Assembly (NCBI GenBank): GCA_943704425.1
Contig: CALSCP010000445.1
Coordinates: 1-33,455 of the forward strand
DNA length: 33,455 bases
Reading direction: 5' to 3'
Source of the DNA: Ministeria vibrans ATCC 50519
Lineage: Eukaryota; Protista; Filasterea
Shown: in pieces, positions 879 to 33,455 of the stretch
How the letters are laid out: the number at the start of each line of letters is the position of its first letter
Numbering within the stretch: the stretch's first letter is position 1
Notes under the pieces: generated by a model
Seen by the model: the letters and a program-made list of their open reading frames with translations, nothing else
The model's database searches: none
What the model was told of the DNA's origin: nothing
Position numbers and translations under genes: made by a program

Positions 879-1480
879 GTATCTATCTATCTATCTATCT
901 CACTCTCTCTCAAACTATCTCCCTCTCCCTCTCTCAAACTCTCTCTCTCTGAAAAACTCTCTCAAAAACTCTCTCTCAAACTCTCTCTCTCTCTCTCAAA
1001 AACTCTCTGAAACTCTCGCTCTCAAACTCTCTCTCTCTCCATCCCTGAAAATACCTTCACCGCGCTGAAAAGCATGAGGCCAGTGGACAAGATAGAGATC
1101 AACGTAGTCCAGCTGAAGCGAGGCGAGGGTCGTCTTGAGCGACGGAATCACGTCTTCTTTGTGATGCTTTGTGTTCCACAATTTGCTGGTGACAAAAAGG
1201 TCTTCGCGCTTCACCACGCCCGCCTGGATGCGATCCGCAATGGCGGCACCCACCTCCGCTTCGTTTCCATAAGCAAATGCACAATCGATGTGGCGGTATC
1301 TGCATCGAGGAGAAGGAGGAGGCGTCAGGACACGCACCAGTGCACTCGCGCCGCCTACCCTGCGTCAATGGCCGCCTTGACCGCAGCCTCAACCTCGCCA
1401 GCCTTTGATTTCCACGTGCCCAGTCCCACATGCGGCATTTTAGCGCCCGTGTACAGCGTAGCGTGTGTTTGGTTGCTCAT
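75..1480 (-). CDS. Aldo-keto reductase (AKR1-like); 3' end lies beyond the left edge. Exons 1480-1359, 1299-1055, 568-263, 169-75
   Basis: Spliced translation gives [63 protein letters not shown] and [10 protein letters not shown]. All introns have GT donors and the three complete ones end in AG with consistent phase. Confidence 0.95.
630..1040. repeat. Compound (TC)n / (TCTA)n microsatellite with TATCACTTTGTTT and CTCTCAAA units in AKR intron 2
   Basis: Directly visible; it produces the spurious SLSLSL ORFs. Confidence 0.95.
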
Positions 1481-1751
1481 TGGGGTGTTTTGATGGCAAG
1501 TGAAAAGCAAATAGAAGGCTGAGAAAAAGAAAAGCTCCTTGAGCATACAAACTGAAAAAATAGTAATGATCAATCAAAGTGATTAGTGAGGATTGAAATT
1601 AGAGAATGGGGCATTATATTTTTTATCATTGGCATAAGGTGACAGGTGTTAAGTCTCTAGAACCTAAGTTTCACAATTCAGGTCGTCTGAAACTCGTCTT
1701 AAAAACGCGTCAATATAATTTGAAACCAAGTTTGCTTGAGAAATAGTGTCT

Positions 1752-3825
1752 TCAATGCCAAAGAGAAAGATCAAAGGCGTCGCCAACAGTCCCATTTCCA
1801 CTGAGAACAAACTCACAGGAGAAGACAGTCGTGTTAGCGTGGCACAGACTAAATCCAGCGAGGGCAATCTGGGCGCCTGTCGCCCACTGAGATGGCACAA
1901 AGTGTTTGTCAAAGCGCTCCTTGTTGCCCCCGGCGCCCGACAGGACGTGAACGGTGCCGGACGGGGCGGCGTAAGTGCCGCTGATGACGCCGTTGTCGGT
2001 AACGGGCATGGTGCGCTCGTAGTGGTGGATGTGCGCCCCAAAGTACAGCGACACTTTGTAGCGCGTAAATAGCGGTTCCAGCTCACGGCGCAAACCCTCT
2101 GCGTACAGCACACAGTCAGATTTTTTCGAGTCCGAGCAGTCTAAAACACAAATACAAAGGTTAACGAAAAATAACACACACGAGGAGGAAACAGTGAAAT
2201 GAAAAATGAACTTGACAAAGAATGATGAAAAAGACTTGCCACACACTCACGTACAGAGAGGACGGTGGCCCATGACAACAATCCAAGGGCGCACTGCACG
2301 GGCGGCAGGGGTAGCAGCCGCAGCAAGGTCGGCCTCGAGCCACTGGTACTGGAGTGAGTCTGGAGTGAACTGGAACGGGTACAAACCTATGTGCCAGAGA
2401 GGTATGTCAGTCAGTCTATTAAACACAAAAATGCACTTTGCAGAGAAAGGGAGGGGTTACCATCGGGGCCCTCAGTGCGAAGGGCAACAAAGTGGACAGG
2501 GCCATTGTTGAAGGAGTAGTAGAGGCGATCAGTGCTGTTGCTTGTCTCGTAGGGCATGTGGAAACGCGCACGGTATGCTGCAAACTCATAGAACCCCTCG
2601 TGGTTGCCAGGCATGGTCATGTACGGCACAAAGCCTGCTGTGGTCGCAAACTTGCGCATGTACTGGTCCCATAGCGGCTGGTAGCCGTCCGCATAGCTAT
2701 AATTGAAAATTGCGATGATTTAAAATTGTGTGTGGGCGCAATGTGTACGTACGAAATGTCGCCAATGTGCGAGACAAAGTCAATCTGCTGCGACTGCGCC
2801 AGCTGTGCCACACGAAAACTTGTCATGTCACCCTGGTCCGATGCGCCAGTGTCACCGTACAGTGCAAAGTTGACTCGCTTAGCTGTACACCCCGTCATAC
2901 GAGTTAGTGCGAGGTCTTACTTGCGCTCAACATTCGTACCGTTTTCTGTGGGACCCCAGAAGTGAGCACCCTGATCCTCAGACCACTGAGCTTTAAACCA
3001 CTGGCCGGGCACGCCAACAGCACCGACGCGGTAGAAATAGCGCTGGCCAGGCGTGAGACCTGTGACCAGCACGTCGTGGAGAGTGCCGACCCAACCGCCG
3101 TGATTGTACGTCGTTTGCGTGCCCGACGCCGACGACGCCCACATGTCCGTCTCCCAGCCATTCTCCACGTCCCACTGTACGGTCGAGTCGGGTGTCTCCT
3201 TGAGCGTGGACCACATGATGCGCAGCTCGCCAGCTCGACCGGTGTACGCAAGATGAATTCCCTCGGGTGTCACAGGGTTGCAACACTCAAAGGTACACAG
3301 TCCGCCGAGGATGCCGCACACAGCACGAGGCGAGTACTTCACCCATACGTACGTGTCGGCGTTCACAATGAGCTGAGCGAAGGAGACGACCGCCTTTTCA
3401 CAGTCGGGCTGGATGGATGACGGCAGAATGGCGCACACTTTGTCGAGAGCCGCAACAATCTGCAAGAGGAGGTCGGCAGTGTGAGTGTGATCTTGCGCGC
3501 GACTTCACGCATGCGGGCAGGCGGTTGCTGCAACGCGTCTCGTGAGAGCAAGTGCGATGATGTTCGACTCGTCTGGCACAAGACCATGCCAATTTCGCCT
3601 CCACCTGCACCCACTCCGATTCCATTTCGCAACCCCCTTCTCAGGACACTGCGTGGCGCGTGGCGCGCAACACCATACCTCGTGTTCGGTTGCGTTCGAA
3701 CGTAAATCCGGCAAAATCTCCGCTGTCGCAGCTTCACATATCGAGCAGAAAATGCCACTCTCCTTGGCAGGGGCGCCACTCACACAAGCCACAAAGGCCA
3801 ACACCAGAGCAAGCTTTCGATACAT
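1752..3825 (-). CDS. Secreted purple acid phosphatase (ACP7-like) with N-terminal saposin-B-like domain. Exons 3825-3679, 3459-2940, 2882-2753, 2696-2461, 2386-2255, 2140-1752
   Basis: Signal peptide MYRKLALVLAFVACVSG; saposin-type Cys pattern; FN3-like PAP N-domain (PEGIHLA...LHDVLVTGLTPGQRYFYRVG); metal-ligand motifs GDTG, GDISY, GNHE, VMGH and AHIH. Five GT-AG introns. Confidence 0.92.
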
Positions 3826-3938
3826 GTTAACAGTAAAAAAAAATTTCAAATAATCAAATAATTAGAAGAATTACTTTTAACGTTTTTTTTTGCACTCGTT
3901 CTCAGTTCATTTTCACCCTCTTCGTTAAAAGGAGGCGA

Positions 3939-6105
3939 TCAGGCAGGGACAACCTCGACCTTCTCGCTGATAAAAACACTCTGGACAACTTCAACGCCCT
4001 CCACATACTCGGGTTCGCGATCTTGTCCGCCGCGCAACGCCATGAGCTTCTCGTGCTCCTCGGCATTGATGGCGTCCACCTTGTCACGGAAAGCCTTGTA
4101 CTCGGCTTGCAGGCGTGCACGACGCTCCTGGACCTCCTGAGAGGCGCTGTTGGACAGAAGCGTATCGAGGCGGTCGTACTTGATGCTCCACTTTTTCAGA
4201 TCCTTCTTGACCTGCTTGCGTGCATCCTCAGCAAGCAGCAGCGCCGGGCGCGGGCGCCATACAAACTGGTAGAACAGATCAAGTGGCTTTCTCAGAATCT
4301 AGGAAATCAATAGAATTTTAGGCAAATTAAGGCAAAAAAATAACAATATGGAAATCTAAATGGAGTGGCTTTTCTGACCTGTTTTCCCGTAAAAGACCAG
4401 ATGAAGTAGCCATTCTCCATTTGTTTGTGCCAGGCACTGACAGACGTCGTAACAAAACGCCCACTAGGGTCCCATGCCACATCAGTGCACATAAAGTGGT
4501 CTACAACACACAGTTGGAGAGAGACAGGAAGAAAAAAGTCAATAAACCCCACGGAAGTGAGAGAGCGGAGGAAGGAGAACCAATGACGAGAGAGGAGAAA
4601 GACCAAAGTGAAAGTGGGAGGAAGGGAAAAGGACAAAGGAGGAAGAACAAAGTGAGGGACAGGAGGAAGAAGAATAAAGTGGGAGAGACACAGAGGAGAG
4701 GGAGAATAAAAGAAATGCGAGAGATGGTTGTTGTGTGCAACGGACCTCCCATAGCGAGTGTGGTCATGTCGGACGTGTCAAAGAACTCGAGCGTGCCGTT
4801 AAGGTTGCCCAGTCCCGCCAGAATGATGTACTGTCCGGCCGGAGACCAGAACAGGGCGTTCACAGCCTTCTTCTCAAGCGTTTCTAATGACATACGTGCG
4901 TGAGTGGGTATGTAATATATTTAATGTATGTATACGACTTACTGCGACAGACAATTTTTCCGAGTTCGTGAGCTTTGGCGGCAGTTTCGACCTTGTAAAA
5001 ACTGACAGAAATCTTGGGGGAGTCGCCATGGATGATCGCGAGCTGGTCGCCATGGGGCTCCCATAGGAACGCCGTGATGGTGTCTGTGCAGAGAAGAAGG
5101 AGTGAGCGCGAATGGAGCTGCGTTTGAATGTTGCGTGATTGTGTGTGCATGAGTGTGTGGGCGTGTGTATATATGTGTGTGTGTGTGCGTGTGCATGAAT
5201 GTGTGCGTGTGCATGAATGTGTGGGCGTGTGTATGTGTGTGTGTGTGTGCATGGGTGTGTGGGCGTGTGTATGAGCTTACCTTTGAGTTCAATGGCTTCG
5301 ACGGGAATGGCCTTTTCGCGGATGCGGAAAATCTCAAAGTTGGTAAAGGTGTTCTTCTTGCTCTTGGTATAACGATCGACCTTGACGCACAGGTAGTCTC
5401 CCTGAGGATGCCAGCGGAAGGCACAGGAGGAGACGTTGACAAGGTTCTTGATGGCGAGCTCTTTCCAGTCGGGCACGTCGGCAATGACAACGCGCGCCGG
5501 CGTGTTAGTGCTCTCGGGCAGCCAGTAGGCCAGGTGTGTGTCGCTGGGGCTCCACTCAAAGTTGCGCACGTCGGCAATCTTGTGTGTCTGGCGCGTCATG
5601 GCAGGAATCGAATACACGTCAATGCCATCCTTTTTGAGCGAGATGCGCGCCAGGTAATTGCCACAGGCAGACCACTTGAACTTGAAGACGGGCCAGGGAT
5701 GCTTCTCGCGCTCGCTGACGTGCTGGAAGGCGCGCAGCTTGCGACCGCTACGCACGTCCCACACCACAATAGCCTTGGGGTCGGCCTTGCTGTCCGTCAC
5801 TTCGGGCGAAAAGGTCATAAGGTAGCGCTCGCATGGCGACCATTCCAGAAGTCGCACGCCAAAGTGCGCAAACTTGTTCAACTGCTGCCATTTCTCGCCG
5901 CCCCAAATCGCCACGCCAAGCTGGTGCACCGTCGCCAGGTACGACCCTCGCGGTGACCACGACAGAAACGACTCTGTCCAGTACTCGCGCACCTCGGCAT
6001 CCTCCGGGTCTGTTACCCCCCCACCGTTCCAGTACACACCCGTTGTAGGTCCATATCGCACGGCAAACTATTGGGTGAGAGCGTATGAGATGTTAGAAAA
6101 AAAGC

Positions 6106-6137
<32 letters not shown>

Positions 6138-7129
6138 AAAAAATAAAATAAATTAATAATACAATAAATTTATTAAGAAAGGGACAAGAGACACGCGCAT
6201 ACAAACACATACACACACACACTGGTAGAAATACAAGAATGGTATGTACCTGATCGCGGTGACGCGAGTCACGGAGCCACTGACGCAAATCGGGACGCGG
6301 CTTGAACTCTGTCAGGTCGACGGGAACGTACTCGTCTGGCACCTGCTGTGAGCGCTCCACGTCATTCAGCGGGTTCACCAACAACGCATGGTTTTTGTCC
6401 AGCTTGAAGCCGTTCATGGCGGCCGCAACAGAATGTGCGCTTGCAGGCTGGAGGTACTCACAAAAGGCAAAGCTACACGAAAACGAGAGATGCACAAGTG
6501 TCAGAGAGTATCACTCAACGAGTCTGTCCAGACTCGATCCGAGACGCACCCCTTAGTCAAGCCCTTGGCGTCAACCGGCATGTGTATCGCGGGCTTGTCT
6601 GCCTTGTCCAGCTCAGGCGTGAATTTCTTCAGCAGAATCCCCTTGAGCTTCTCAATCCTGTCCGGCCCAACTTGCGGAAGGTTGTCCACAACGATGCAGC
6701 ATGGTGCCAGGTCCACCAGCGTCGGCCGATCCCTCAAAATGTCGGCGACTATTTCTGCAGTGGAGTGAGACAACGCGCGTGAAATGGTGAAACATGGAAC
6801 AGAAAAAAAAAAAAAAAANNNNNNNNNNNNNNNNNNNNNNNNNNNNNNNNNNNNNNNNNNNNNNNNNNNNNNNNNNNNNNNNNNNNNNNNNNNNNNNNNN
6901 NNNNNNNNNNNNNNNNNNNNNNNNNNNNNNNNNNNNNNNNNNNNNNNGCCCGTCACACGACTCAGCGCAATCGCGATCCCTCTCAACAGCGCCCACTTGC
7001 ATCCCACCACCCTCAAGAGGGTCGGAGGTGGAGGAATAGAGAAACACGGGAGAGGTGCAGGCGACAAATTTCCAAGAACGACAGCCGCTTAATACCGTCT
7101 TCAGGGCGAATTTCCATTTCGTTCGACAT
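3939..7129 (-). CDS. EIF3B: Translation initiation factor eIF3 subunit B. Exons 7129-7096, 6754-6550, 6472-6250, 6067-5281, 5083-4943, 4883-4746, 4500-4379, 4298-3939
   Basis: RRM (IVVDNLPQVGPDRIEKLK...TKGFAFCEY), beta-propeller (WSPRGSYLAT, GDYLCVKVDRYTKSKK, WDPSGRFVTTSVS) and C-terminal WRPRP...KKDLKK. An N-gap lies in intron 1. Confidence 0.96.
5140..5272. repeat. Compound (TG)n microsatellite in EIF3B intron 4
   Basis: Repeated GTGTGTGCATGAAT and GTGTGGGCGTGTGTAT units; source of the HTHTHT ORFs. Confidence 0.9.
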
Positions 7130-7195
7130 AGTCAAAAAAAAAATGATCAACGAATAACATTTTTTATTTGTCTCGTCAGTCGTTCTCAAACCACA
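7130..7195. promoter_or_regulatory. Putative bidirectional promoter between EIF3B and PSMB7 (66 nt between start codons)
   Basis: Divergent ATGs at 7129 (-) and 7196 (+); AT-rich spacer with CATTTTTT on both strands. Confidence 0.6.
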
Positions 7196-8423
7196 ATGGA
7201 GGTCCAGGTTGTTGATCCGCCTAGGGGAGGCTTTGATTTTGAGCTGTGCGCTCGGTACGTTTTGACTTGGATCGTTGCTCACTTCCCGTCCAAAAAACAC
7301 AACCCGACAGCGACGCACTACGCTGCGACACACATACACACGCCCACACGTCTAGTCGCACGACGATGTTGCTCCTCTTCCATGTGCAACCTTCACCGTG
7401 GTCGGCTTCGCTTTCCTTTCAAAAGAATTGATTCGTGAAGTTTCAAGAAGAACACACAAAAAAAAAAAAAAAAACGAACGGCTCATCCTCTGCCCTTCTC
7501 TGCGTCACGCTGGCGGGCGTCTTTGCTGCAACCGCACATGCACCGTAGTATTCTATTGCTATCCCCACCTACATTGTCGCCTTATTTCCGTTTAGACCGA
7601 CAAAGCAAAGAAAACGAACAAAGCTGACCCTTTTTTATTTAGAAACGAAATGCTCGCCAGCTCGGGAACCAAACTGCCTCGTGCAACAAGCACGGGCACG
7701 ACCATTGTTGGTCTGGTCTGTGACGGAGGCGTGGTGCTCGGTGCGGACACACGCGCTACGAATGGCTCGATTGTTGCCGACAAGAACTGTCGCAAGATTC
7801 ACTACATCGCGCCCAACATTTACTGTTGTGGCGCAGGCACGGCCGCCGACACGGACAAAACCACGGATATGATCTCGTCCCGTCTCGAGCTTCATCGTCT
7901 GCGAACGGGCCGCGAATCGCGCGTCCAAACCTCCTGCCGTATGCTTAAGCAGTACCTCTACCAGTACCAGGGTCACGTTTCGGCTGCCCTTGTTCTCGGC
8001 GGTGTAGACTGCACAGGCCCCAAGCTGTACTCGATCCATCCTCACGGCTCTACCGACAAGCTTCCTTACGTCACCATGGGCTCAGGTTCGCTCGCGGCCA
8101 TGGCCGTCTTCGAGGCACGCTACAAGCCGGGCCTGTCCATTGCGGATGCAAAGGAACTCGTCGCCGACGCAATCCTTGCCGGTGTCTTCAACGATCTCGG
8201 CTCCGGATCAAACGTCGATGTGTGTGTCATCACCAAGGACAACGTTGACTACATTCGCCCCTACAACATCGCCAACGTCCGCCCCGACCGTCATCTTCAG
8301 TACCGCTACCCCAAGGGTTCCGTCGAGGTCATATCCGAGACTGTCACCTACTTTAAGAAGGGCCCGCAAGAGGCCGCTGCCGAAGAAGGCACAGCCGATG
8401 CACCCGTCCCCATGGAATCTTAA
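7196..8423 (+). CDS. PSMB7: 20S proteasome subunit beta-2 (trypsin-like). Exons 7196-7254, 7643-8423
   Basis: Propeptide [14 protein letters not shown], processing site TG|TTIVG, and motifs [40 protein letters not shown]. Confidence 0.97.
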
Positions 8424-8630
8424 TTCTCTCTCCCACTCCCACGCCTATTACCCCCTCCTTCTCCGCCATCAATGTACACCATTTAGAAGAAAAGAAAAAA
8501 ACAATAATAGTAATTGGTCGCTTCATTCATGTAAAAAAAAAAATCATTCTCTCGTCCTCTCTTTCTCTCCCTCAAACGCACGCACACACACACACACATA
8601 CACTCCATCTCTCATCCTTTGCTACGCTTA

Positions 8631-11600
8631 TTATTTCTTAATGCGAGCAAGTCCGTCGATGTCTCGAGGTGCCTCAGTCACAGCAGGTTCAGAAGGCGCC
8701 GCAGTTGCCTGCATGCTCGAAAGACGCGCCGACGACCGACGCTCGCTTGCTTCGCCAAGCAAACTCAAACGTGAGCCTGGCGCACTTCCTGCGCCAAGAG
8801 TCGACGTGCGCGATCCTGCGTAGCTCCACCGTTGTCGTTCGCGCATAGCCCGCTCGTGAGTGCGCAGTTGAGATCGTGCAGCCGCACGCTCCTCAAAGGT
8901 CGCTGCACTTGCCACCTGCTGCTTAAGATACTCCTTCATAGCCGCGTCACTCTCGGGCGTCACCGGTCCATCTGTCGATGGCGGTCCCACCGGCGCCGCA
9001 TCTGATGCTGAAGAAGCCACCCCAGCGTCCGCTGGAGGAGTGGCGGCGGGGACTGTGGCAGAGGCCGTGGCAGCGGTCAGTGCATCACCGTCAAGCACAC
9101 TCGATGCGCGTCGCGCTGCGCGTGCTTCGTGTCGATTGGCCGCATTCATAATGCCCTGCAAACGCGCATCCATGTTCGCTGCCTCAGAGGGTGTCGCTGA
9201 CGCCACAACTTCAGCTTCAGCAGCATTGACGGATTCAGTCGAAGGTGTTTCAGTTGTCGTGGCCTTCTCAGCAGCCTCGGCGTCAGAAGCGGCAGCTGCA
9301 GCATCCGCCTTGACCTGTGCCTCAGCATCAGCCTTGGCCTGTGCCTCAGCATCCGCCCCCGCCACCTTGTTGACCTGTTGCTCAACAGATAAATTGACCT
9401 GGGCCTCAGTAGTCACATTGGCCTCAATCGCCTGCGCCTCAACTTCGGAACCACTGGAGGCAGGCTCGGTCGCGGTGATTGGCACTGGGGCACTCTCAGC
9501 AGCTGAAGTCCCATCGTCAGACGTCGTCGAGGGCGCGCCCGCCTGGAGACCGGCAAGGAAGGCCTTTCGCTCCGACTCAGCCTTCGCCTTCTTCAAGCGA
9601 CGCTGCTCGCGACGCTGCTCCAACTCAGTTAGCTGCGAGCTCACCGTGGTCTTGGGCTCGGTGGGTGCTGCAACAACCGGCGCTGCAACGGGCTCCGCCG
9701 CGGGGGTAGAAGGATTAACAGAAGAAGAAACGGTAGTACCAGAAACAGCAGCAGAGGTGGCGGGAGGCGACGAAGGTAGAAGTTGAGCAGAGGTATCCAG
9801 GGAGGAACGGCGATCGCGTTGGAGTGCCTGTAGTTTGCGAACACGCTGCAACTCATCGCGTTTCTCTTGCTCCACTGCCCGCTCTGCCTCTAGACGCGCC
9901 TCCTCCGCACGAGCCGCCTGCTCCTCAGCCAGTCGCTGCTGCTCCTCAGCAGCGCGAGTCGCGGCCTCTCCTTCGGCCGCTTGCTTCTCTTCGCGCGCTC
10001 GCTCCACCGCCTCGAGTGCCTGTCGAGCTGCCCCTTGTTCGCGCGCAACACGTTCCGCCTCAATCTCCTCCGCCTCGCGCGCCTGTCGTTCCTTCTCCTC
10101 GGTAGCCTGTCGCTGCAGCTGCATCAAACGCTCCCGACGCGCCTCCGCCTCGGCCTCGCGTCGCTGAATTTCCGCCTCGGCAGCCCGAGCACGCTCAGCA
10201 CGAATGCGCATCTCTTCTGCGCGCGAACGCTGCGCAATCGCTTCTCGCTCGCGTTTGAGTCGCTCCTGCTCGAAGACCTCCGCCTCCGCCTCTTCAATCA
10301 AGCGCTGACGTTCCCGCTCGGCCGCCGCCTCACGCTCGCGTTCTTCGCGCTCCGCTCGTTCAGCCGCCTTACGAATGCGCTCCGCCGCCTTGAGCTGCAA
10401 TTCGTTGCGCTCAAGATCGGCGCGCTCCTGTTCCTGTCGCAACTTCATGGCACCCTCCGTCTCGCGCTTGGGACCACGCGACAGCGAATCGCTGCGTGGT
10501 CGCGTAAACGAGTCACTGCGAGGCCGCGAGAAGGAGTCGCGGCGCTCAAAAGAGAGCGAATCGGCGGCGGCAAAGGCCGGAAACGAGCCGGAAAGGGCCG
10601 GCGACATTTGCGGCGAGATCGAGCTCGTGCTCGACTCGTACAGGTCGCGCTGGGCCGCCACACGATGTGCCATTTGCGCCGCCTCCTGAGCATCCCGCTC
10701 TGCTCGCTTCTGCTCCTCAACCAGCTGCTGCTCGCGCTCGTGCGCCTTGCGAGCTCGCTCCGCCACCTTTCGTTCCATCTCCTGTCGCTCGTACTCAATG
10801 CGCTCCTTCTCCTCCTGCATCTTGCGCAACATCTCCGTCTGTCGTGGTCCTGACTTGGGGCTTGCCGGACCACGCACAACCGGTGGTGGGCTTGCAGTGG
10901 GCACATCTTGTTGTTGTTGCTGATGCACTTGTTGTTCCTGCTGTTGCTGACTCCGACGGGCACGCATTGCCTCGGCCTTTGCCTCAAGCTCCTGTCGTTC
11001 GTGAGCCTCTTGATCGGCACGGAACCTGGCCGTTTCCGCTTCGCGCAACTGACGCTCGCGTGCAGACGCAGCGGCAGCCACATCAGCACGTTTACGTTCC
11101 TCCTGATCACGACGAGCCATCTCCTGGTGTACTTTCTCTTCCTCTTCCGCCTTTCGACGACGATCCGCCTCCGCACGCGCTCGTGACGCCTTCTTCATCT
11201 CCTCCTCACGCTGTGCCTTGACACGAATCGCATCCAGGCGGCGTTCCTCCTCAAGACGTTCCTTCTCCTTGTGTTCAATCTCGAGACGCACCCGCTCGAG
11301 ACGCTCCTTCTCCTTGCGATCAGCCTCGCGCAATCGCGACTCCTCCAATTGACGTTCGCGCTCCAGCTCGGCCAGACGTAGCTGCTCCTTAAGTCGCTCT
11401 GCCGCACGTCGCTCGTTTTCCAGACGCAGTCGCTCGGTCTCCTCGGCCTTGCGCGACGCCTCAGCACGCGCCTCGTCTGCCTCGCGTCGCTCGCGCTCGA
11501 TGCGTTCACGCTCCAACTGCTCTTGACGTTCGCGTTCGCGTGCAGCTCGCTCCGCTGCCTTGCGTGCGCGGTCCGCAGTGAATCGTTGAAACTCGCTACG

Positions 11601-20677: not shown

Positions 20678-21768
20678 TGAATTTTGTGCGTGTCGCGCGC
20701 GCGTGTGTGTGCGGTATGTCGAGTCGTGTCTCTCCAGTCGTACTGTAGTCGCGGGTGTAGAGGCCCTGGCGCGTCGTCACGGCGTTGATGAGAGAGGTGT
20801 CGTCGATGGTGCGCTCGCAGACGACGGTGAGCAAAGTAGACGCATTGACGACACAGGAAATCTCGTAGTGAGCCGTCTTTAGTGTGTGGCAGCAGATGGA
20901 CGGTTCGTGTTCTTGAAATGGCGTGCAGACGCCGCGCTGGACGGTCGTAAGGAAGAGGGCGCGTGAGAGCTCTGTAATAGGTAAGAGACGCTGTTCAAGC
21001 ACGCAGGGTACGCTGGAGAAGAGAGAAAAGTTGACGTCGCGAACGGTCTCGGTGAGCTGCCATGCATTGAAGGCAAGGGGAAACATGAGGTAGGCCAGGC
21101 TGCGTGTCGTGTCGGTGAGCACTGTCTCAATGTTGACGCGCTGGCGCAGCACAGGCGCACTCCAGTGCTGGTCGTCGGTCCACTCGACGCATTCACGATC
21201 TCGCTCACATGCCCCCAGACGATGTGTCACAAACAGATGAAGGTCCGACAGCGACGCAATCTTGGCGTGCCCGCGATCACCACGTTGTGTCAAGACTATG
21301 TCACACACACAGGGCGCCTGGACAGGGGTTGCACACAAAACTGGGACGAGCCCACCAGCGGCAAGAACAGTCGCACTCGTCGGCAGCATGTTGTTGTGCA
21401 GACTTGCCTCGGTCCACTGCCGACGCACGCGGCATACACTCACGTGCGAGAAACACCGACAAAAATCCTCAAAATTCATAAAGAATACCCCCTCATCATC
21501 GTGCTGATCGGTGCCCATCTGATGGCGCAGCAGCGGTGTCCACTGAGGCGCGGACGGGCCCCAGGCACCTCTCCACACGTGTCGGTCGCTTGCCCATGGG
21601 TTGCGCAAACGCACCAGGCGCACTGTCGCGTTGTAGGCGGTACGTAATGCCAGGATTGAATAAGCATGTCGGGCGACAAGTCCGGCGACGTCGGCGGGAC
21701 ACGAGGCAGTCAGAAGGAATCCACTGTCGAGCATAGAGACAAGACGAGTCCACAACATAACCCTGGCG

Positions 21769-23112: not shown

Positions 23113-25058
23113 TCATATTTTGTGGTGCCGGGCAATCTCTCCTCCAAGAATTTCAATTTGTTCCTTGGAAAAATAACGAATCAGATTGTTCAACAATCAC
23201 AAATAAAATGATATTATACTTTGAGATGAATATTGCTCAGGATAGTGCTCTCGAGGACCGATTGCATTCGCTGGTTGATTTCCAACGAGAGCTCGAGGGT
23301 CATGGACGAATCCTAAACATACAATGGAGTCTCGATAAGACTGCACAAACGGGATACAAATCGCAATGTTCAATTCAATGACCTTGCGCTGAGCGTTGAG
23401 AATAGAGGCACGAATGCTCTTCGTCTTGGCGGCACGCAGGCGGTCGACGTCGGCAGCGGGACTGGTGAGAGTAGAGGGAAGGGCGGTGGCGGGACCATGA
23501 GTGGCCGTGGGAGCAGCGGCAGTCGTGGCGGGTGCGTCCGAAGAGGCGCCCACCAGAAGCGCCTGGACGACACGCTGTTTGTCGCGCACTTCCAACTGCA
23601 GTGTCTCGGTATGTTCGCGCAGAACGGATTTTTGGCGTTCGCTTTTGCGCAGCTGTGTTTGCAGTTGGGCAACGCGTTGCAGAAGCATTTTGTTGTCTTC
23701 GTCAAGCTGAAGCAGTTCAAAGGAGGCGTCACGCGCAACGGAAGGCGCTGTTGATGCCAGGGGAGGCGCAGAAAGAGCCTTGTGAGAGACAGGAGAAAGG
23801 GATGGAGAAGGTTCATCATCGTCGTCGTCGTCGTCATTGTCGTCGTCATTGCCGTCGTCGCACAGGACAGGGAGGGTGGCAGCTTCACTCCCGGCCAAAA
23901 AAGGGCTAGGGAGCGTGGGCGGAGAAGACGTAGGGCGCCCTGGCGTCGACTTGGACGCCAACTTGTTGTCTGATACATTCGATGCTATCCCCTTGGCACT
24001 GTCGATGTGTGGCACAAGAAGAATGTCAGCAGTGGACGCGACTGCTTCGTTAAGTTTGCGTTCGCGAGCCAATTCCCGTTTCAGTTCGCGTGTCTGATTT
24101 CCCGCACGTTTCGCTGCGAGCACTGCATTTTCGCGCTCTTCGTCGACTCGTTGCTCCAGTGTTGCAACTCCTTCCTGGGCAGTGACCAGAAGTGCGCGAG
24201 TTTCCTCAAGATCCTTGTGGAGCGCTTGCAACTGAGCCTGAGCCAAGTCGCGACTCTCGCGCAGCTCCTTCTGCTCGCTTCGCAAGCTTGTGACGTCCCG
24301 GCGCGAGTTTTGTAGTGCACGAGCAAGATCGTCTGCTTGTCCACGTGCACTCTCAGCGGCCTCTTCGCTTGCATCAAGCTCCGTTTGTGTTCGAGTGGCG
24401 CGCTGCAATGCCGCTTCGAGTTTGGCGGACGCCGCTTCAAATTGAACGCGTAGCGTTCGTTCGTCCTGGCGTGCCGTCTCGGCCTCGCGTCGCGAGCCCA
24501 ACAAGAGCTGGTTGACACGCTCAAGCTCCTCGGTACGCGACTTCATCAGGGCATCAAGTGACTCGTCAGCGAGCAACTTCGCTTTGAGTCGCTCAATCTC
24601 ATCCTCGAGTTCGCTCGTACGCTGAGCACTCTGTTGGACTCGTCGTTCGCTGGCCTGCAACTCTTCATCGGATCGACGTGTTTGGTCGCCGCCAAGCGAC
24701 ATGAGCTCCTGCACCGACTCCAATTCATCGCACGTTTGCTCGTGCGTTCGAGTGAGCGTCGCCAATTTCTTCTCCAGCTCGTCGCAACGTCCACGCCACT
24801 CGCCTGCCGTGCGGTCCTCGGCATCTTTCACTTGAGTGACCATTATTTGGTACTGTTTGCGCAAGAGACCGCCTTCTTCTCGACTCTATCAGATGGATAA
24901 GTGTTGAAACCCTCTAATCGAATGATCGTTATTATTACTTCGCGCAGCTTCGCCTGAAGCAAAGTGGCGCTTGCTACTGCTTCATCGCGTTCCGCTTCCA
25001 CCTTTTTTAACTTGTTTTCAGTCCATTGCAGCTTTATTGCGTCCTTGCTAGCGGCCAT
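23113..25058 (-). CDS. CCDC186: Coiled-coil domain protein 186 homologue. Exons 25058-24939, 24885-23383, 23312-23220, 23163-23113
   Basis: IKLQWTENKLK and C-terminal [38 protein letters not shown] match the CCDC186 signature segments as I recall them; long coiled coil in between. Confidence 0.82.
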
Positions 25059-30876: not shown

Positions 30877-32142
30877 ATGATGCACCCCATCTTCATCCTT
30901 CTAGCCGCTAGCCTCACTTCCGTCCAGGCACACCAGTACTTTGCGTGTCTCCACGCCGAAGCGTGTCCTTATGAGAGCGTCACGAGCAAAGATCTTGCAT
31001 TCTGCAACGCCCCTTTTGAAGGACACAAGTTCATCGAGCTTACTGATCAGTTGAGCAACACGGCTGTGTGTGCTCGTTGCCAGTTTCAACCCATTGTAAG
31101 CGCGTTCATTTATAATGAATTTATAAAGATTCAATAAAAGTTTTGAACCTAAAATAATTTTCCTTCGAAACTGTCTCTCCCCAAAACTTAGATGCGATAC
31201 GAGCTGATCGGAGAGCATGTTGACCATGGCGCTGGTGTTGTCGTGTGCCGTGGAGAGCTGCCTGAAAGCACCGAGACACGCGCGTGCAGCGAATTTTTGC
31301 CCATTTCTATTTTGACAACATTCTCAAGTGCCGGCAAACGAGCCCTTTCTTTCCACGTCGCAACTACCGTTGCCGACGCGACAAAGCGTTCGTGGTTGGA
31401 GTGGACCGACACGGAGAAGAATAGTGCAGTCCTGCATATTCAGCTGCATACGTCGTCGTTCAGTGACGCCTACAAATTTGACGCCCTCTCTGCTGAAAGG
31501 TTTGAAAACCCCCCATTCCTGACCCTCCCTCACCTTCTATTCCTTGGCGCCTCTGTGAAATCAGTATTGACTTATTTGAATGTGGAATTAAGTATCCATC
31601 ACTCGACTAACGAGCTCCTAAACAAACCATGAAACATGTTGATGGCGAAGCAAAGAAGAAGCAAAGATTGATAATAATAATAATTATTATTATTAATTAT
31701 TATAATTTTATTACTTTTGTTATCGTGCTTTTGTTGTTGATCTCGTGACTGTACCATGATTACATTGGTTGTATTCTTATTATTATTATTATTATGAGAA
31801 TTATTATTATTATTATGAGAATTATTTTTATCTATGGTGACAGTCGTCATTCTTTGTAAAAGTCTTAATTGATAATAATTCATAATTTATTTTTACATTC
31901 CTGCTTGTAGCATACTGGAAGTGGACAAGTACAATGAACTGATTGATGGTATCCATGGCGTGACGGATCACGGAGGTGACAAAGACCATCTAAATCCATG
32001 CCGACAGAGAACTGCCCATCACAGCTTGCGCCGTCTCATTCGCGACGTTGCGGTATCGCTGTTTGGCGACGATGTCATGAAAAGTGTTAAATTTAATCTT
32101 GCCCGATACGCCCGTCAGCCCGAAAAATGTTCGAACACTTGA
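30877..32142 (+). CDS. Uncharacterised ~261-aa secreted protein. Exons 30877-31095, 31192-31499, 31565-31591, 31911-32142
   Basis: Signal peptide MMHPIFILLAASLTSVQA and several cysteines. Three ORF fragments join in phase when a 27-nt micro-exon with GT-AG boundaries is used. Confidence 0.7.
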
Positions 32143-32238
32143 AGAAACAACCTACATTCAAAACAAATTAATACACTCGAAAGACAGTAATAGTTACGAA
32201 GAAGAAAAATAATAATTAATAATGGGTTTTTGGAAGTC

Positions 32239-32260
32239 CTAGGGTTAGGGTTAGGGTTAG
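32239..32260 (+). repeat. Telomeric repeat tract CTAGGG(TTAGGG)2TTAG
   Basis: Directly visible. Confidence 0.9.
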
Positions 32261-32730
32261 ATGGACGGGAGGAATGCCCAGCGTTTGTATCAGCAATGAC
32301 AGAGCTGGTACGCAGTTGTGTTCGACTGCGTCGAGCTCCATCGCGTGCCAAGAGCTTGCTCGACTGGCATGTGCTTTCTCTGTGCTGCGTCAAGTGTTGA
32401 GTGATCGTGGCGCCTGGCGTCAGTCGTGGATGCCCTCTCGGGGGTGTTTGCTAGCAGCGCTACAAACACCTGGGGTGCCAGCACCACCGTGCGCGAGACT
32501 CGCGCCCCTCGCCAGGTGCTGAAGCAGGCCCGCTTGCAGTGCCTGCGCCTGGTTGGCGACGGTGGTTGGTTGGTGCCGAGCTCGCCGTCTACTTAGTCAC
32601 ACCAGTGCCCAGCGGTGCAAATTGCGGCGCTCTTGCCAGTCTTCTGAGATCCTTTGTCGACCGTCGGTTTTGCAGGAGATGCAGCTCGTCATATTTCCCT
32701 GACTCAATTTCAACAACAACAAAAAGAAAA
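32261..32730 (+). mobile_element. Probable severely 5'-truncated non-LTR retrotransposon copy (ORF end + 3' UTR + tail), or a non-autonomous element
   Basis: Bounded by TTAGGG tracts on both sides, GC-rich with hairpins, ends in CAACAACAACAAAAAGAAAA, and begins with a short frame xDGRNAQRLYQQ*. Confidence 0.5.
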
Positions 32731-32747
32731 TCGGGTTAGGGTTAGGG
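32731..32747 (+). repeat. Telomeric repeat tract TCGGG(TTAGGG)2
   Basis: Directly visible. Confidence 0.88.
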
Positions 32748-33455
32748 TCACGGTCGTGCTCTCCGATGGCTCTGGGTCTGCTCTGTGACGTTTTGTTGGT
32801 GCGCGAAGAGTTTCACGCCAAGACGGAGGTTTTGCACGTTAAGGCACATGTGACGGATCGTGTTCGGACGCGTGAGGAGGAGTGGAACGAGCGTGCTGAT
32901 GGGATTGCTCGCGGTGGTCTTGAGCGTTTGCGTGGCAATATGGAAGGGAACAATGAGTATTTGGCAGAGCTGGCAATGCGTTGGGACTGGTGTGCGTTAC
33001 TGGGGTCGACGCCAATCAGTGGCGTGTGCATTCGCTTGGGTTGCGATGGCCGGGACCGTCGAGTGGAGCGCGCGGATGCCGGAGCGGCCAATCAGGTGCC
33101 TGTTGATAGGGCTGGTGCTACTGCCGGTCTAGATTTGCAGGATCATAATGCAAAACGACTGTTGAAGGACGTGCAACGTGATCGACTGTGGCGTGCGATG
33201 TCGGGCCATGTGCACCAGGGCAAGGTCGTTCGGGAGTCTGGTCATGAGTGGGTCAGGAGTGTGACAAGTAAGGTGGAGTGGAACGTCCGTCGTTTTCTTG
33301 TGCGTCTATGCTGTGGTCGATTGCCATGCGCTGCGGTGCAAAAGGAGCGGAAGCTACGGGACTCAGCGTTGTGTCCTGAATGTGGCGACGAAGATGAAGA
33401 TGTGGACCACATGTTTGCGTGCACTGCATCTGGGGTTAGTGGTATAGAGCGCGCC
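32748..33455 (+). mobile_element. 5'-truncated non-LTR retrotransposon ORF: RNase H C-terminal part and CCHC (zf-RVT-like) finger, open to the window end
   Basis: 236 stop-free codons containing EVLHVKAH...WNERADGIAR (RNase H His/Asn/Asp motif) and RRFLVRLCCGRLP...LCPECGDEDEDVDHMFAC (C-x2-C...H-x3-C). Confidence 0.85.

What the first reader, a model, noticed from the sequence alone, without database searches (positions are those of the whole stretch)
32239..33455. Candidate telomere-repeat-targeted non-LTR retrotransposon array embedded in TTAGGG repeats
Seen in the sequence: two short TTAGGG tracts, the only tandem ones I found in the window. Each is followed directly by GC-rich sequence unlike the host intergenic DNA. 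The second is fused in frame to a stop-free ORF that starts in the middle of an RNase H domain and continues to a CCHC finger. Established: RNase H followed by a CCHC finger is the C-terminal architecture of some non-LTR ORFs, 5' truncation is typical of target-primed reverse transcription, and telomere-specific non-LTR elements are known in insects (TRAS/SART), Magnaporthe (MoTeR) and Giardia. Inference: these are head-to-tail truncated insertions into telomeric repeats, representing a possibly undescribed TTAGGG-specific, RNase H-bearing family in this protist lineage.
Basis: partly seen in the sequence, partly recalled or inferred. Interest (0 to 1): 0.85.

Follow-up and report, generated by a model that had tools for sequence, protein, structure and literature searches.

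The report
Telomere-repeat-specific LINE retrotransposon fragments
The end of this contig is a chromosome end where broken copies of one jumping gene, a LINE retrotransposon that inserts almost only into the TTAGGG telomere repeat, are stacked between short telomere tracts; the type is known from silkworm and a few fungi and protists, but this family is new and very divergent.

Summary
Two short TTAGGG tracts (32240-32260, 32733-32748) are each followed by foreign GC-rich DNA. The second is fused in frame to an open frame that starts inside an RNase H domain and runs through a CCHC finger to the contig end.

Both blocks carry 5'-truncated pieces of one ~8.8 kb LINE. A full-length natural copy (L081) has ORF1 and a 2222-aa ORF2: APE-like endonuclease, RT, RNase H, CCHC finger.

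Across the genome:
- About 25 independent junctions read "TTAGGG tract, then truncated element", nearly always sense on the G-rich strand.
- About 27 of 37 genuine 3' ends listed run straight from ...CATGTCTC into GGTTAGGG, in one phase and without poly(A).
- 12 of 14 full-length 5' ends follow TTAGGGTTAGGGT(T).

Some contigs with the element end in long terminal TTAGGG runs. Other strains share the unique flank up to the first tract and then differ.

One correction: block 1 is a chimera. It holds 110 bp of this element plus about 360 bp of an inverted fragment from another LINE family.

The closest solved RT is human L1 ORF2p. The working analogue is silkworm SART1. The scan reached the same reading earlier on another contig of this genome (s1-763922). 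Verdict: real, a new member of a known kind.

The parts
32240..32260 (+). First telomere tract, (TTAGGG)3.5. It marks the end of chromosome-unique DNA.
   Evidence: Contigs from other strains (X6, X8) follow the unique flank up to 32248/32257 and then continue differently.
32261..32370 (+). Element fragment 1: 110 bp of ORF2 just upstream of the RT core (residues about 981-1017), in sense orientation. It is cut off at both ends.
   Evidence: 97% identical to C2679:428-535. Protein match at E 5e-12. ORF2 numbering. The contig depth here is about 75 times the flank depth in run X1.
32371..32732 (-). Degenerate, frameshifted fragment of a different L1-like LINE family, inverted relative to the G strand. 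Homology covers 32431-32703.
   Evidence: About 70% nucleotide identity to L036/L038 on the strand opposite their ORFs. tblastx E 1e-21 to L036/L038, and nothing significant against the full-length element L081.
32733..32748 (+). Second telomere tract, (TTAGGG)2.7.
   Evidence: The T at 32748 is shared with the element (one base of microhomology; compare L002).
32749..33455 (+). Element fragment 2: a 5'-truncated copy covering ORF2 residues about 1897 to 2132. It holds the RNase H C-terminal half (to about 32915) and the CCHC finger (33372-33422). It runs off the contig end.
   Evidence: Open frame. 99-100% identical to copies on C2693, C2223, C100, C31 and C2121. Contiguous with RT and endonuclease in the natural copies L079 and L081.

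Best explanation
The last 1.2 kb of the contig is the inner edge of a chromosome-end array made by a telomere-repeat-specific non-LTR (LINE) retrotransposon.

The element, as shown by natural copies:
- It is about 8.8 kb long, with a 5' UTR and an ORF1 of unknown type.
- ORF2 has 2222 residues: N-terminal extension, APE-type endonuclease, linker, reverse transcriptase, RNase H, CCHC (zf-RVT-like) finger.
- The 3' UTR is about 0.48 kb and ends ...CATGTCTC followed by GGTTAG repeats. There is no poly(A).

Inferred mechanism: the endonuclease nicks the C-rich strand of a (TTAGGG)n tract at one position of the repeat. The freed 3' end pairs with the telomere-like tail of the RNA and primes reverse transcription (target-primed reverse transcription). 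Copying usually stops early and leaves 5'-truncated copies. The sense strand therefore always lies on the G-rich strand, with the 3' end pointing to the chromosome tip.

Ends then erode into the elements and are healed with new repeats. A TERT gene is present, so telomerase is the presumed source. The healed tracts offer new targets. This yields the observed mosaic of short tracts (12-47 bp) and pieces truncated at the 5' end, the 3' end, or both.

Shown: the structure, the flanks, the orientation, the phase, the domains and the differences between strains. Inferred: the nick position, the RNA-tail pairing, and erosion followed by healing.
For: (1) One element. L079 (TARA scaffold) has one uninterrupted 1329-aa frame from RT through RNase H and the finger to the stop, then the 3' UTR and TTAGGG. 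L081 has the whole 2222-aa ORF2 plus ORF1.
(2) Domains. RVT_1 scores E 3e-16, above the cut-off. The RNase H fold is confirmed. For the endonuclease, Pfam Exo_endo_phos scores E 0.022-0.097, the atlas neighbours are all Exo_endo_phos families, and the motifs FNTKG, GDLND, RLDRIL and DSDH are present.
(3) Target. In 33 contig pieces, about 25 junctions read 'TTAGGG tract, then 5'-truncated element' at different truncation points. All but two are sense on the G strand.
(4) 3' end. 41 termini were found in the genome, and 22 are followed by GGTTAGGGTTAGGG in the same phase, against 0 for the reversed-pattern control. About 27 of the roughly 37 genuine ends listed reach at least one full repeat.
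(5) 5' end. Of 14 copies of the CAGTTTTATTCATTTC... terminus, 12 are preceded by TTAGGGTTAGGGT(T).
(6) Chromosome ends. C2693, C2326, C1583 and C1262 end in 8 to more than 18 terminal repeats distal to the element.
(7) Reads. Single-copy-depth contigs from the 2011 and 2022 data sets cover 31830-32288 and 32322-32470. Element depth is roughly 40-100 times the flank depth. Metagenome strains diverge right after the first tract.
(8) A 43%-identical relative from an ENA metagenome ends ...CTGTTCGG, then (TTAGGG)3, then the same CAGTTTTATTCAT start.
Against: No listed read contig bridges 32730 to 32749. About 10 of the roughly 37 genuine 3' ends are followed by AT-rich non-telomeric DNA after only GGT, GGTT or GGTTAG. 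The endonuclease is supported only by sub-threshold scores and motifs; its QET glutamate reads QDT, and the single-sequence structure model failed (pLDDT 35). Two arrays lie inside long scaffolds (C1735, C2825), although both abut N gaps. No expression or transposition data were obtained. The genome has no full-length copy in its assembled contigs that I could fetch; the full-length copy comes from another public assembly that is 99.3-99.9% identical over most of the element (95% over one RT stretch).
Confidence: 0.85

Rival explanations
1. The element has no real target preference. It simply carries a (GGTTAG)n tail in place of poly(A), and the arrays arise because new copies land in the tails of old ones, or because copies are tolerated only at chromosome ends.
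For: Copies outside telomere tracts still end in GGT, GGTT or GGTTAG, so the tail travels with the element.
Against: The innermost copies at about 20 different unique chromosome flanks are already preceded by a TTAGGG tract with no older copy upstream. Full-length 5' ends follow the repeat in a nearly fixed phase. Only about a quarter of the 3' ends are off target.
Confidence: 0.07
2. The element is added to naked chromosome ends without an endonuclease, primed by the G-rich 3' overhang. Drosophila HeT-A/TART and endonuclease-deficient Penelope-like elements work this way.
For: The location is terminal. Some junctions have no repeat between two pieces (C2679, A4:511 joined to the RT piece).
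Against: Overhang priming would put the antisense strand on the G strand, with the 3' end facing the centromere. Here the sense strand is on the G strand in about 25 of 27 junctions. ORF2 also carries an APE-like domain. The Penelope-like fragment in L002 does have the overhang-primed orientation, which shows the contrast.
Confidence: 0.04
3. The tracts are interstitial break-repair scars or an assembly artefact, and the LINE pieces are ordinary dispersed insertions.
For: The tracts are short (16-21 bp). The contig stops inside the repeat. The second junction is not bridged by read contigs.
Against: The same architecture recurs at dozens of contig ends, with terminal repeat runs. It also appears in independent data sets: TARA, an NCBI assembly and an ENA metagenome. 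Single-copy-depth contigs span the first junction in two studies.
Confidence: 0.03

Closest known systems
SART1 and TRAS1 of Bombyx mori (R1-clade, telomere-repeat-specific LINEs; PMC7265360, PMC2868851)
   Same: APE-type LINEs that insert into the telomere repeat in a fixed orientation and phase. They need only a few repeats as target, form arrays of 5'-truncated copies, and coexist with telomerase. SART1 has the same polarity, with the sense strand on the G-rich strand (from my own knowledge of the family).
   Different: The target here is TTAGGG, not TTAGG. There is no poly(A); the 3' end runs into GGTTAG. The RT matches L1 ORF2p best among solved structures, and no R1-clade structure appeared among the matches. 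ORF2 is about twice as long (2222 aa) and carries RNase H and a zf-RVT-type finger.
L1-type LINEs (human L1 ORF2p, PDB 8sxt/8c8j; CoL1-CoL4 of Capsaspora, PMC4007536)
   Same: L1 ORF2p is the best solved-structure match for the RT (E 5.5e-7, against 0.014 for R2). The order APE, then RT, then C-terminal cysteine-rich motif is shared. 5' truncation is shared.
   Different: This element has no poly(A) and strict target choice. Its RNase H domain is absent from human L1. The C-terminal 436 residues have only one relative among 1.84 billion representative proteins. Clade membership was not tested by a tree.
MoTeR / FoTeR of Magnaporthe and Fusarium (PMC7367193, PMC12857005)
   Same: Retrotransposons found in TTAGGG telomeres as head-to-tail, truncated arrays separated by short repeat tracts. 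They lack poly(A) and destabilise chromosome ends.
   Different: From my own knowledge, those elements are CRE/SLACS-like, with a restriction-enzyme-like endonuclease and no RNase H. This element has an APE-like domain and an L1-like RT.
Endonuclease-deficient Penelope-like elements (Athena/Coprina type) and Drosophila HeT-A/TART
   Same: Retroelements that live at chromosome termini between or beside telomere repeats.
   Different: Those are primed from the chromosome's 3' overhang and have the opposite polarity. A fragment of such a Penelope-like element lies next to this LINE in C2693, in that opposite polarity.

Membership tests
Non-LTR (LINE) retrotransposon | Reverse transcriptase domain of the LINE type | tested here: met
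   Pfam RVT_1 E 3.3e-16, 60 bits against a 29.6-bit cut-off. The best PDB matches are LINE-1 ORF2p.
Non-LTR (LINE) retrotransposon | Variable 5' truncation with a common 3' end, and no terminal repeats of its own | tested here: met
   More than 20 different truncation points share one 3' terminus. The flanks are telomere repeats, not LTRs.
APE-type LINE | N-terminal apurinic/apyrimidinic-like endonuclease with its catalytic motifs | tested here: inconclusive
   Exo_endo_phos scores E 0.022-0.097, below the cut-off. All top named atlas neighbours are Exo_endo_phos families. The motifs N108, GDLND355, RLDRIL512 and SDH537 are present, but QET reads QDT. The structure model failed and phmmer against the PDB found nothing.
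Telomere-repeat-specific LINE (functional class of TRAS/SART) | Both flanks are telomere repeats, with fixed orientation and fixed insertion phase | tested here: met
   3' junction: 22-27 of about 37-41 ends run into GGTTAGGG in one phase. 5' junction: 12 of 14 full-length starts follow TTAGGGTTAGGGT(T). Orientation is uniform in about 25 of 27 junctions.
R1 clade (TRAS/SART proper) | RT groups with R1-clade elements in a phylogeny; poly(A) tail | tested here: not met
   No poly(A) at any 3' end. No RT tree could be built because no reference set was available. The only solved LINE RTs matched were L1 (E 5.5e-7) and R2 (0.014).
L1 clade | RT groups with L1 in a phylogeny; L1-type ORF1; poly(A) tail | tested here: inconclusive
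   The best solved match is L1 ORF2p. ORF1 has no Pfam match. There is no poly(A). No tree was made.
RNase H-bearing LINE | RNase H type 1 fold with D-E-D-(H)-D catalytic residues, downstream of the RT | tested here: met
   The model (pLDDT 70) has RNase HI and retroviral RNase H as all of its listed PDB hits. The catalytic positions are conserved. Pfam RNase_H is only E 1.5e-3.
Pfam zf-RVT (C-terminal CCHC finger) | Match to PF13966 above the gathering score | tested here: inconclusive
   19-24 bits against a 27.5-bit cut-off. The CX2CX8HX3C motif is conserved in the 43%-identical relative P0001.
Overhang-primed terminal retroelements (HeT-A/TART, EN-minus Penelope-like) | 3' end faces the centromere; no endonuclease | tested here: not met
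   The 3' ends face the terminal repeats, and an APE-like domain is present.

The most novel reading that the evidence does not exclude
In this marine relative of animals, chromosome ends may not be plain telomerase-made repeat runs. They may be a maintained mosaic in which a telomere-specific L1-like LINE (sense on the G strand), an endonuclease-less Penelope-like element (sense on the C strand) and telomerase alternately rebuild eroding ends. The LINE would then act as a partner or back-up in end maintenance, an intermediate between ordinary telomeres and the retrotransposon telomeres of Drosophila, in a lineage close to the animal root.
Probability: 0.15. Interest if true: 0.75.

Novelty: new member of a known kind. 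Interest (0 to 1): 0.5.

Why it matters
Telomere-repeat-specific LINEs are known from few lineages: insects, Giardia, some fungi and green algae. This one is in a unicellular marine relative of animals and targets the vertebrate-type TTAGGG repeat. Its L1-like RT suggests that telomere targeting arose independently of the R1-clade TRAS/SART elements. A natural endonuclease that cuts the TTAGGG repeat at one position would be a candidate reagent. TRAS1 EN has been engineered for that purpose (PMC2868851). Practically, the family explains why dozens of contigs in this assembly stop. It also marks about 20 or more true chromosome ends, which helps finish the genome and interpret the subtelomeric genes other readers flagged.

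Tried and rejected
- Word-indexed homologue searches with the RNase H/finger ORF and with the RT region found nothing.
- phmmer of the C-terminal ORF and of the N-terminal 700 residues against the PDB found nothing.
- A single-sequence AlphaFold model of the endonuclease region was unusable (pLDDT 35), so no fold test of the APE domain was possible.
- I first took L002:1205 as the 3' end of the element. That was wrong: L002 is an exception where a Penelope-like fragment is joined there, and the true end lies 356 bp further on.
- I considered that 32371-32732 might be an inverted piece of the same element, as in twin priming. I rejected this because it has no similarity to the full-length copy L081.
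- I considered Capsaspora CoL3, whose target site is undetermined (PMC4007536), as the identity. This is not supported: the organism occurs in seawater and algal metagenomes, and I could not name it.
- The exact-product look-up of a window gene found nothing.
All inferences rest on natural copies.

Full report
OBSERVATION

The window is the whole contig C445 of a 29.7 Mb, 2860-contig genome. Tandem Repeats Finder reports TAGGGT x3.5 at 32240-32260 and GGGTTA x2.7 at 32733-32748. TTAGGGTTAGGG with up to 1 mismatch occurs nowhere else in the window, with 0.02 matches expected by chance. AT-rich intergenic DNA ends at 32239, and both tracts are followed by GC-rich sequence.

Frame 1 from 32733 is open for 241 codons to the contig end. 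It contains HVKAHV and NERADG, the last two RNase H motifs. It also contains a CX2CX8HX3C finger with a sub-threshold Pfam zf-RVT hit.

WHAT THE TWO BLOCKS ARE

A BLAST of 32749-33455 against the organism's own genome found 24 places. Most lie at contig ends and most lie next to TTAGGG/CCCTAA tracts.

Positions 32261-32370 are 97% identical to part of a 534-aa RT-containing frame on C2679. Block 1 therefore begins with a piece of the same family as block 2.

The rest of block 1 is different. Positions 32431-32703 are about 70% identical to the antisense strand of another LINE family (L036/L038). They have no similarity to the telomeric element.

ONE ELEMENT, SHOWN BY NATURAL CONTIGUOUS COPIES

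- A TARA Oceans scaffold (L079) is 100% identical to C2679 over 795 nt. It continues as one uninterrupted 1329-aa frame through RT, RNase H and the finger to a stop. A 0.48 kb 3' UTR and (TTAGGG)3 follow.
- The one database protein that matches the RT region is P0002 (2222 aa, 100% identical). It lies on an 8818-bp contig of NCBI assembly GCA_041166445.1 (L081).
- L081 reads, in order: the 3' UTR of an upstream copy, TTAGGG x3, a 5' UTR, ORF1 (about 594-2125, with some masked bases), then ORF2 at 2140-8808.
- Adding the 465 nt of 3' UTR known from other copies, the element is about 8.8 kb.

ORF2 landmarks:
- Endonuclease-like motifs: FNTKG 108, VQDTG 159, GDLNDA 355, RLDRIL 512, DSDHA 536.
- RT motifs: SPGDDG 968, FDIAKCFD 1104, RQGSVLGPL 1173, FVDDIAV 1247.
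- RNase H motifs: ATDAS 1761, GEVVAI 1824, WTDN 1845, HVKAHV 1926, NERADG 1943.
- Finger: residues 2105-2121.

The window's fragment 2 starts at about residue 1897. Fragment 1 covers residues 981-1017.

DOMAIN TESTS

- RT: RVT_1 passes Pfam's cut-off (E 3e-16). The best solved relatives are human LINE-1 ORF2p (E 5.5e-7), with R2 far behind (0.014).
- RNase H: only E 1.5e-3 in Pfam. However, an AlphaFold model built on a four-row alignment (pLDDT 70, pTM 0.74) has RNase H type 1 domains (E. coli RNase HI, HIV, MLV, foamy virus) as all of its listed Foldseek PDB hits. The catalytic residues are conserved in three related families.
- Endonuclease: less certain. Pfam Exo_endo_phos is sub-threshold (E 0.022-0.097). 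The language-model atlas puts the region among Exo_endo_phos families (0.93). Most catalytic motifs are present. The structure model failed and phmmer against the PDB was blank.
- ORF1: no Pfam match.

TARGET SPECIFICITY

I mapped natural reference pieces onto 33 contig stretches and printed every telomere tract with its flanks.

- About 25 junctions read "tract, then 5'-truncated element", each with a different truncation point. The element is sense on the G-rich strand. The only exceptions are C2059 and C2290.
- About 20 of these junctions sit directly after unique chromosomal DNA.
- The true 3' end is ...CGTAAAGTTCATGTCTC followed by GGTTAGGG, with no poly(A).
- Genome-wide there are 41 such termini. 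Of these, 22 are followed by two or more perfect repeats in the same phase, and the reversed-pattern controls gave 0. 26 are followed by at least one repeat.
- Reading 21 nt past each terminus shows that about 10 lie in non-telomeric, mostly AT-rich DNA, yet still carry GGT, GGTT or GGTTAG. The repeat-like tail therefore belongs to the element, and off-target insertion occurs.
- A defined 5' terminus, CAGTTTTATTCATTTC..., occurs 14 times. In 12 cases it directly follows TTAGGGTTAGGGT(T). L081 starts 40 nt further upstream.
- The two junctions together fit either insertion at TT|AGGG with no duplication, or a GGTT (4 + 6n) target duplication.

CHROMOSOME ENDS AND TURNOVER

- Terminal repeat runs lie distal to the element at the ends of C2693, C2326, C1583 and C1262.
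- Many pieces are also cut at their 3' side and followed by new repeats, sometimes after a few irregular G/T-rich bases (C1813, C2326, C1167, C1429, C1735). I read this as erosion followed by healing.
- A TERT gene is present (C397, L040, motif FVDDFLLIT).
- Internal tracts are 12-47 bp long.

READS

- In the 2011 and 2022 data sets of the organism, single-copy-depth contigs cover 31830-32288 (across the first tract) and 32322-32470 (across the chimera joint).
- Element sequence has roughly 40-100 times the flank depth, far more than the assembled copies. This explains why the contigs break here.
- In an algal and a seawater metagenome, the unique flank is shared up to 32248/32257 and then continues with other sequence. 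The end structure therefore differs between strains.
- No listed contig bridges 32730 to 32749, so that joint rests on the assembly and on the genome-wide pattern.

RELATIVES

The C-terminal 436 residues have a single relative among 1.84 billion representative proteins: P0001, 43% identical. Its ENA metagenome contig ends ...CTGTTCGG, then (TTAGGG)3, then TT, then CAGTTTTATTCAT. That is the same architecture in a diverged sister family.

Within the genome there are dispersed paralogous LINEs with RNase H plus a zf-RVT finger (L061, 35% identical over the aligned 136-residue RNase H segment) and with a related RT (C2581, 40% identical). Neither has telomere repeats in the stretches I fetched.

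COMPARISON AND VERDICT

The element works like SART1 of Bombyx, which has the same polarity, is repeat-specific and needs few repeats (PMC7265360). It produces arrays like those of MoTeR/FoTeR (PMC7367193, PMC12857005). It differs in four ways: an L1-like RT, an RNase H domain, a telomere-like tail instead of poly(A), and a very long ORF2.

It is not an overhang-primed element, because its polarity is the opposite. A Penelope-like fragment in C2693 does show the overhang-primed polarity.

I found no description of this family in the paper library. The Capsaspora TE survey (PMC4007536) reports L1-type CoL1-4 and does not mention telomere targeting. I could not name the organism; its runs are coded and marine.

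The scan's earlier follow-up s1-763922 reached the same reading on another contig. My analysis was finished before I read that note, and it agrees.

Verdict: a real, well-supported, new and divergent member of a known kind of element.

Noticed in passing
L002 (= G000:C2693) 1206-1851, minus strand; second copy at G000:C37:1099-1749: A Penelope-like RT fragment (motifs PKVHK..RPI and DVEALYPS). It is 5'-truncated directly against 15 terminal telomere repeats and lies sense on the C-rich strand. This is the polarity expected for endonuclease-deficient, overhang-primed elements of the Athena type. Its atlas neighbours are rotifer DUF8422/RVT_1 clusters. The C37 copy sits in a 684-aa open frame.
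   Followed up: partly
G000:C397 about 24541-24777 (L040 about 1500-1800 and 1917-2600): A telomerase reverse transcriptase gene (motifs CSFFYGDME and FVDDFLLIT). The telomere-specific LINE therefore coexists with telomerase.
   Followed up: no
G000 C1813:about 21450-21470, C2326, C1167, C1735; also the unique/tract boundaries of C445, C2223, C2121, C975: Broken ends are often joined to the regular repeats through a few irregular G/T-rich bases (for example gttgtggttctgttc, ggttgacttt, cttcgg). Many tracts are preceded by ...TTC or ...GTCC. The sister family in L078 ends ...CTGTTCGG, so some of these may be tiny 3' stubs of a second telomeric family rather than telomerase start-up errors.
   Followed up: no
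G000 C713:54955, C1788:81202, C12:1774, C159:4823, C1168:155046, C2178:995, C2643:48347 and others: About ten 3' ends of the element lie in non-telomeric, mostly AT-rich DNA. They keep 3-6 nt (GGT, GGTT or GGTTAG) of telomere-like tail. These are off-target insertions that could reveal the minimal target.
   Followed up: partly
L078 (ENA ERZ27266637 k141_502503) 1-1965: A sister family, 43% identical in protein, from a metagenome. It has the same architecture of 3' end, then (TTAGGG)3, then 5' start. Here a stop codon separates the RNase H N-terminal and C-terminal halves.
   Followed up: partly
G000:C1735:79.2-80.6 kb (L033 5184-6546) and G000:C2825:about 9.2-10.1 kb: Arrays of the element inside long scaffolds. 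Both abut runs of N, and C1735 also abuts a (GT)n run. They may be scaffold misjoins of chromosome ends rather than true interstitial sites.
   Followed up: no
L061 (G000:C1833:3530-4417) and L062 (G000:C1260): Dispersed paralogous LINE copies with RNase H (Pfam E 4.9e-4) and a zf-RVT finger. They are 35% identical to the telomeric element over the aligned 136-residue RNase H segment and have no telomere repeats nearby. They are candidates for the non-specific ancestor lineage.
   Followed up: partly
L081 400-441 compared with G000 C1887:56405 and 11 other 5' ends: The full-length copy in L081 starts 40 nt upstream of the usual CAGTTTTATTCAT start and reads CTG instead of CAG there. L079's next copy diverges from C1887 after about 45 nt. 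There may be two start sites or two 5' UTR variants.
   Followed up: no
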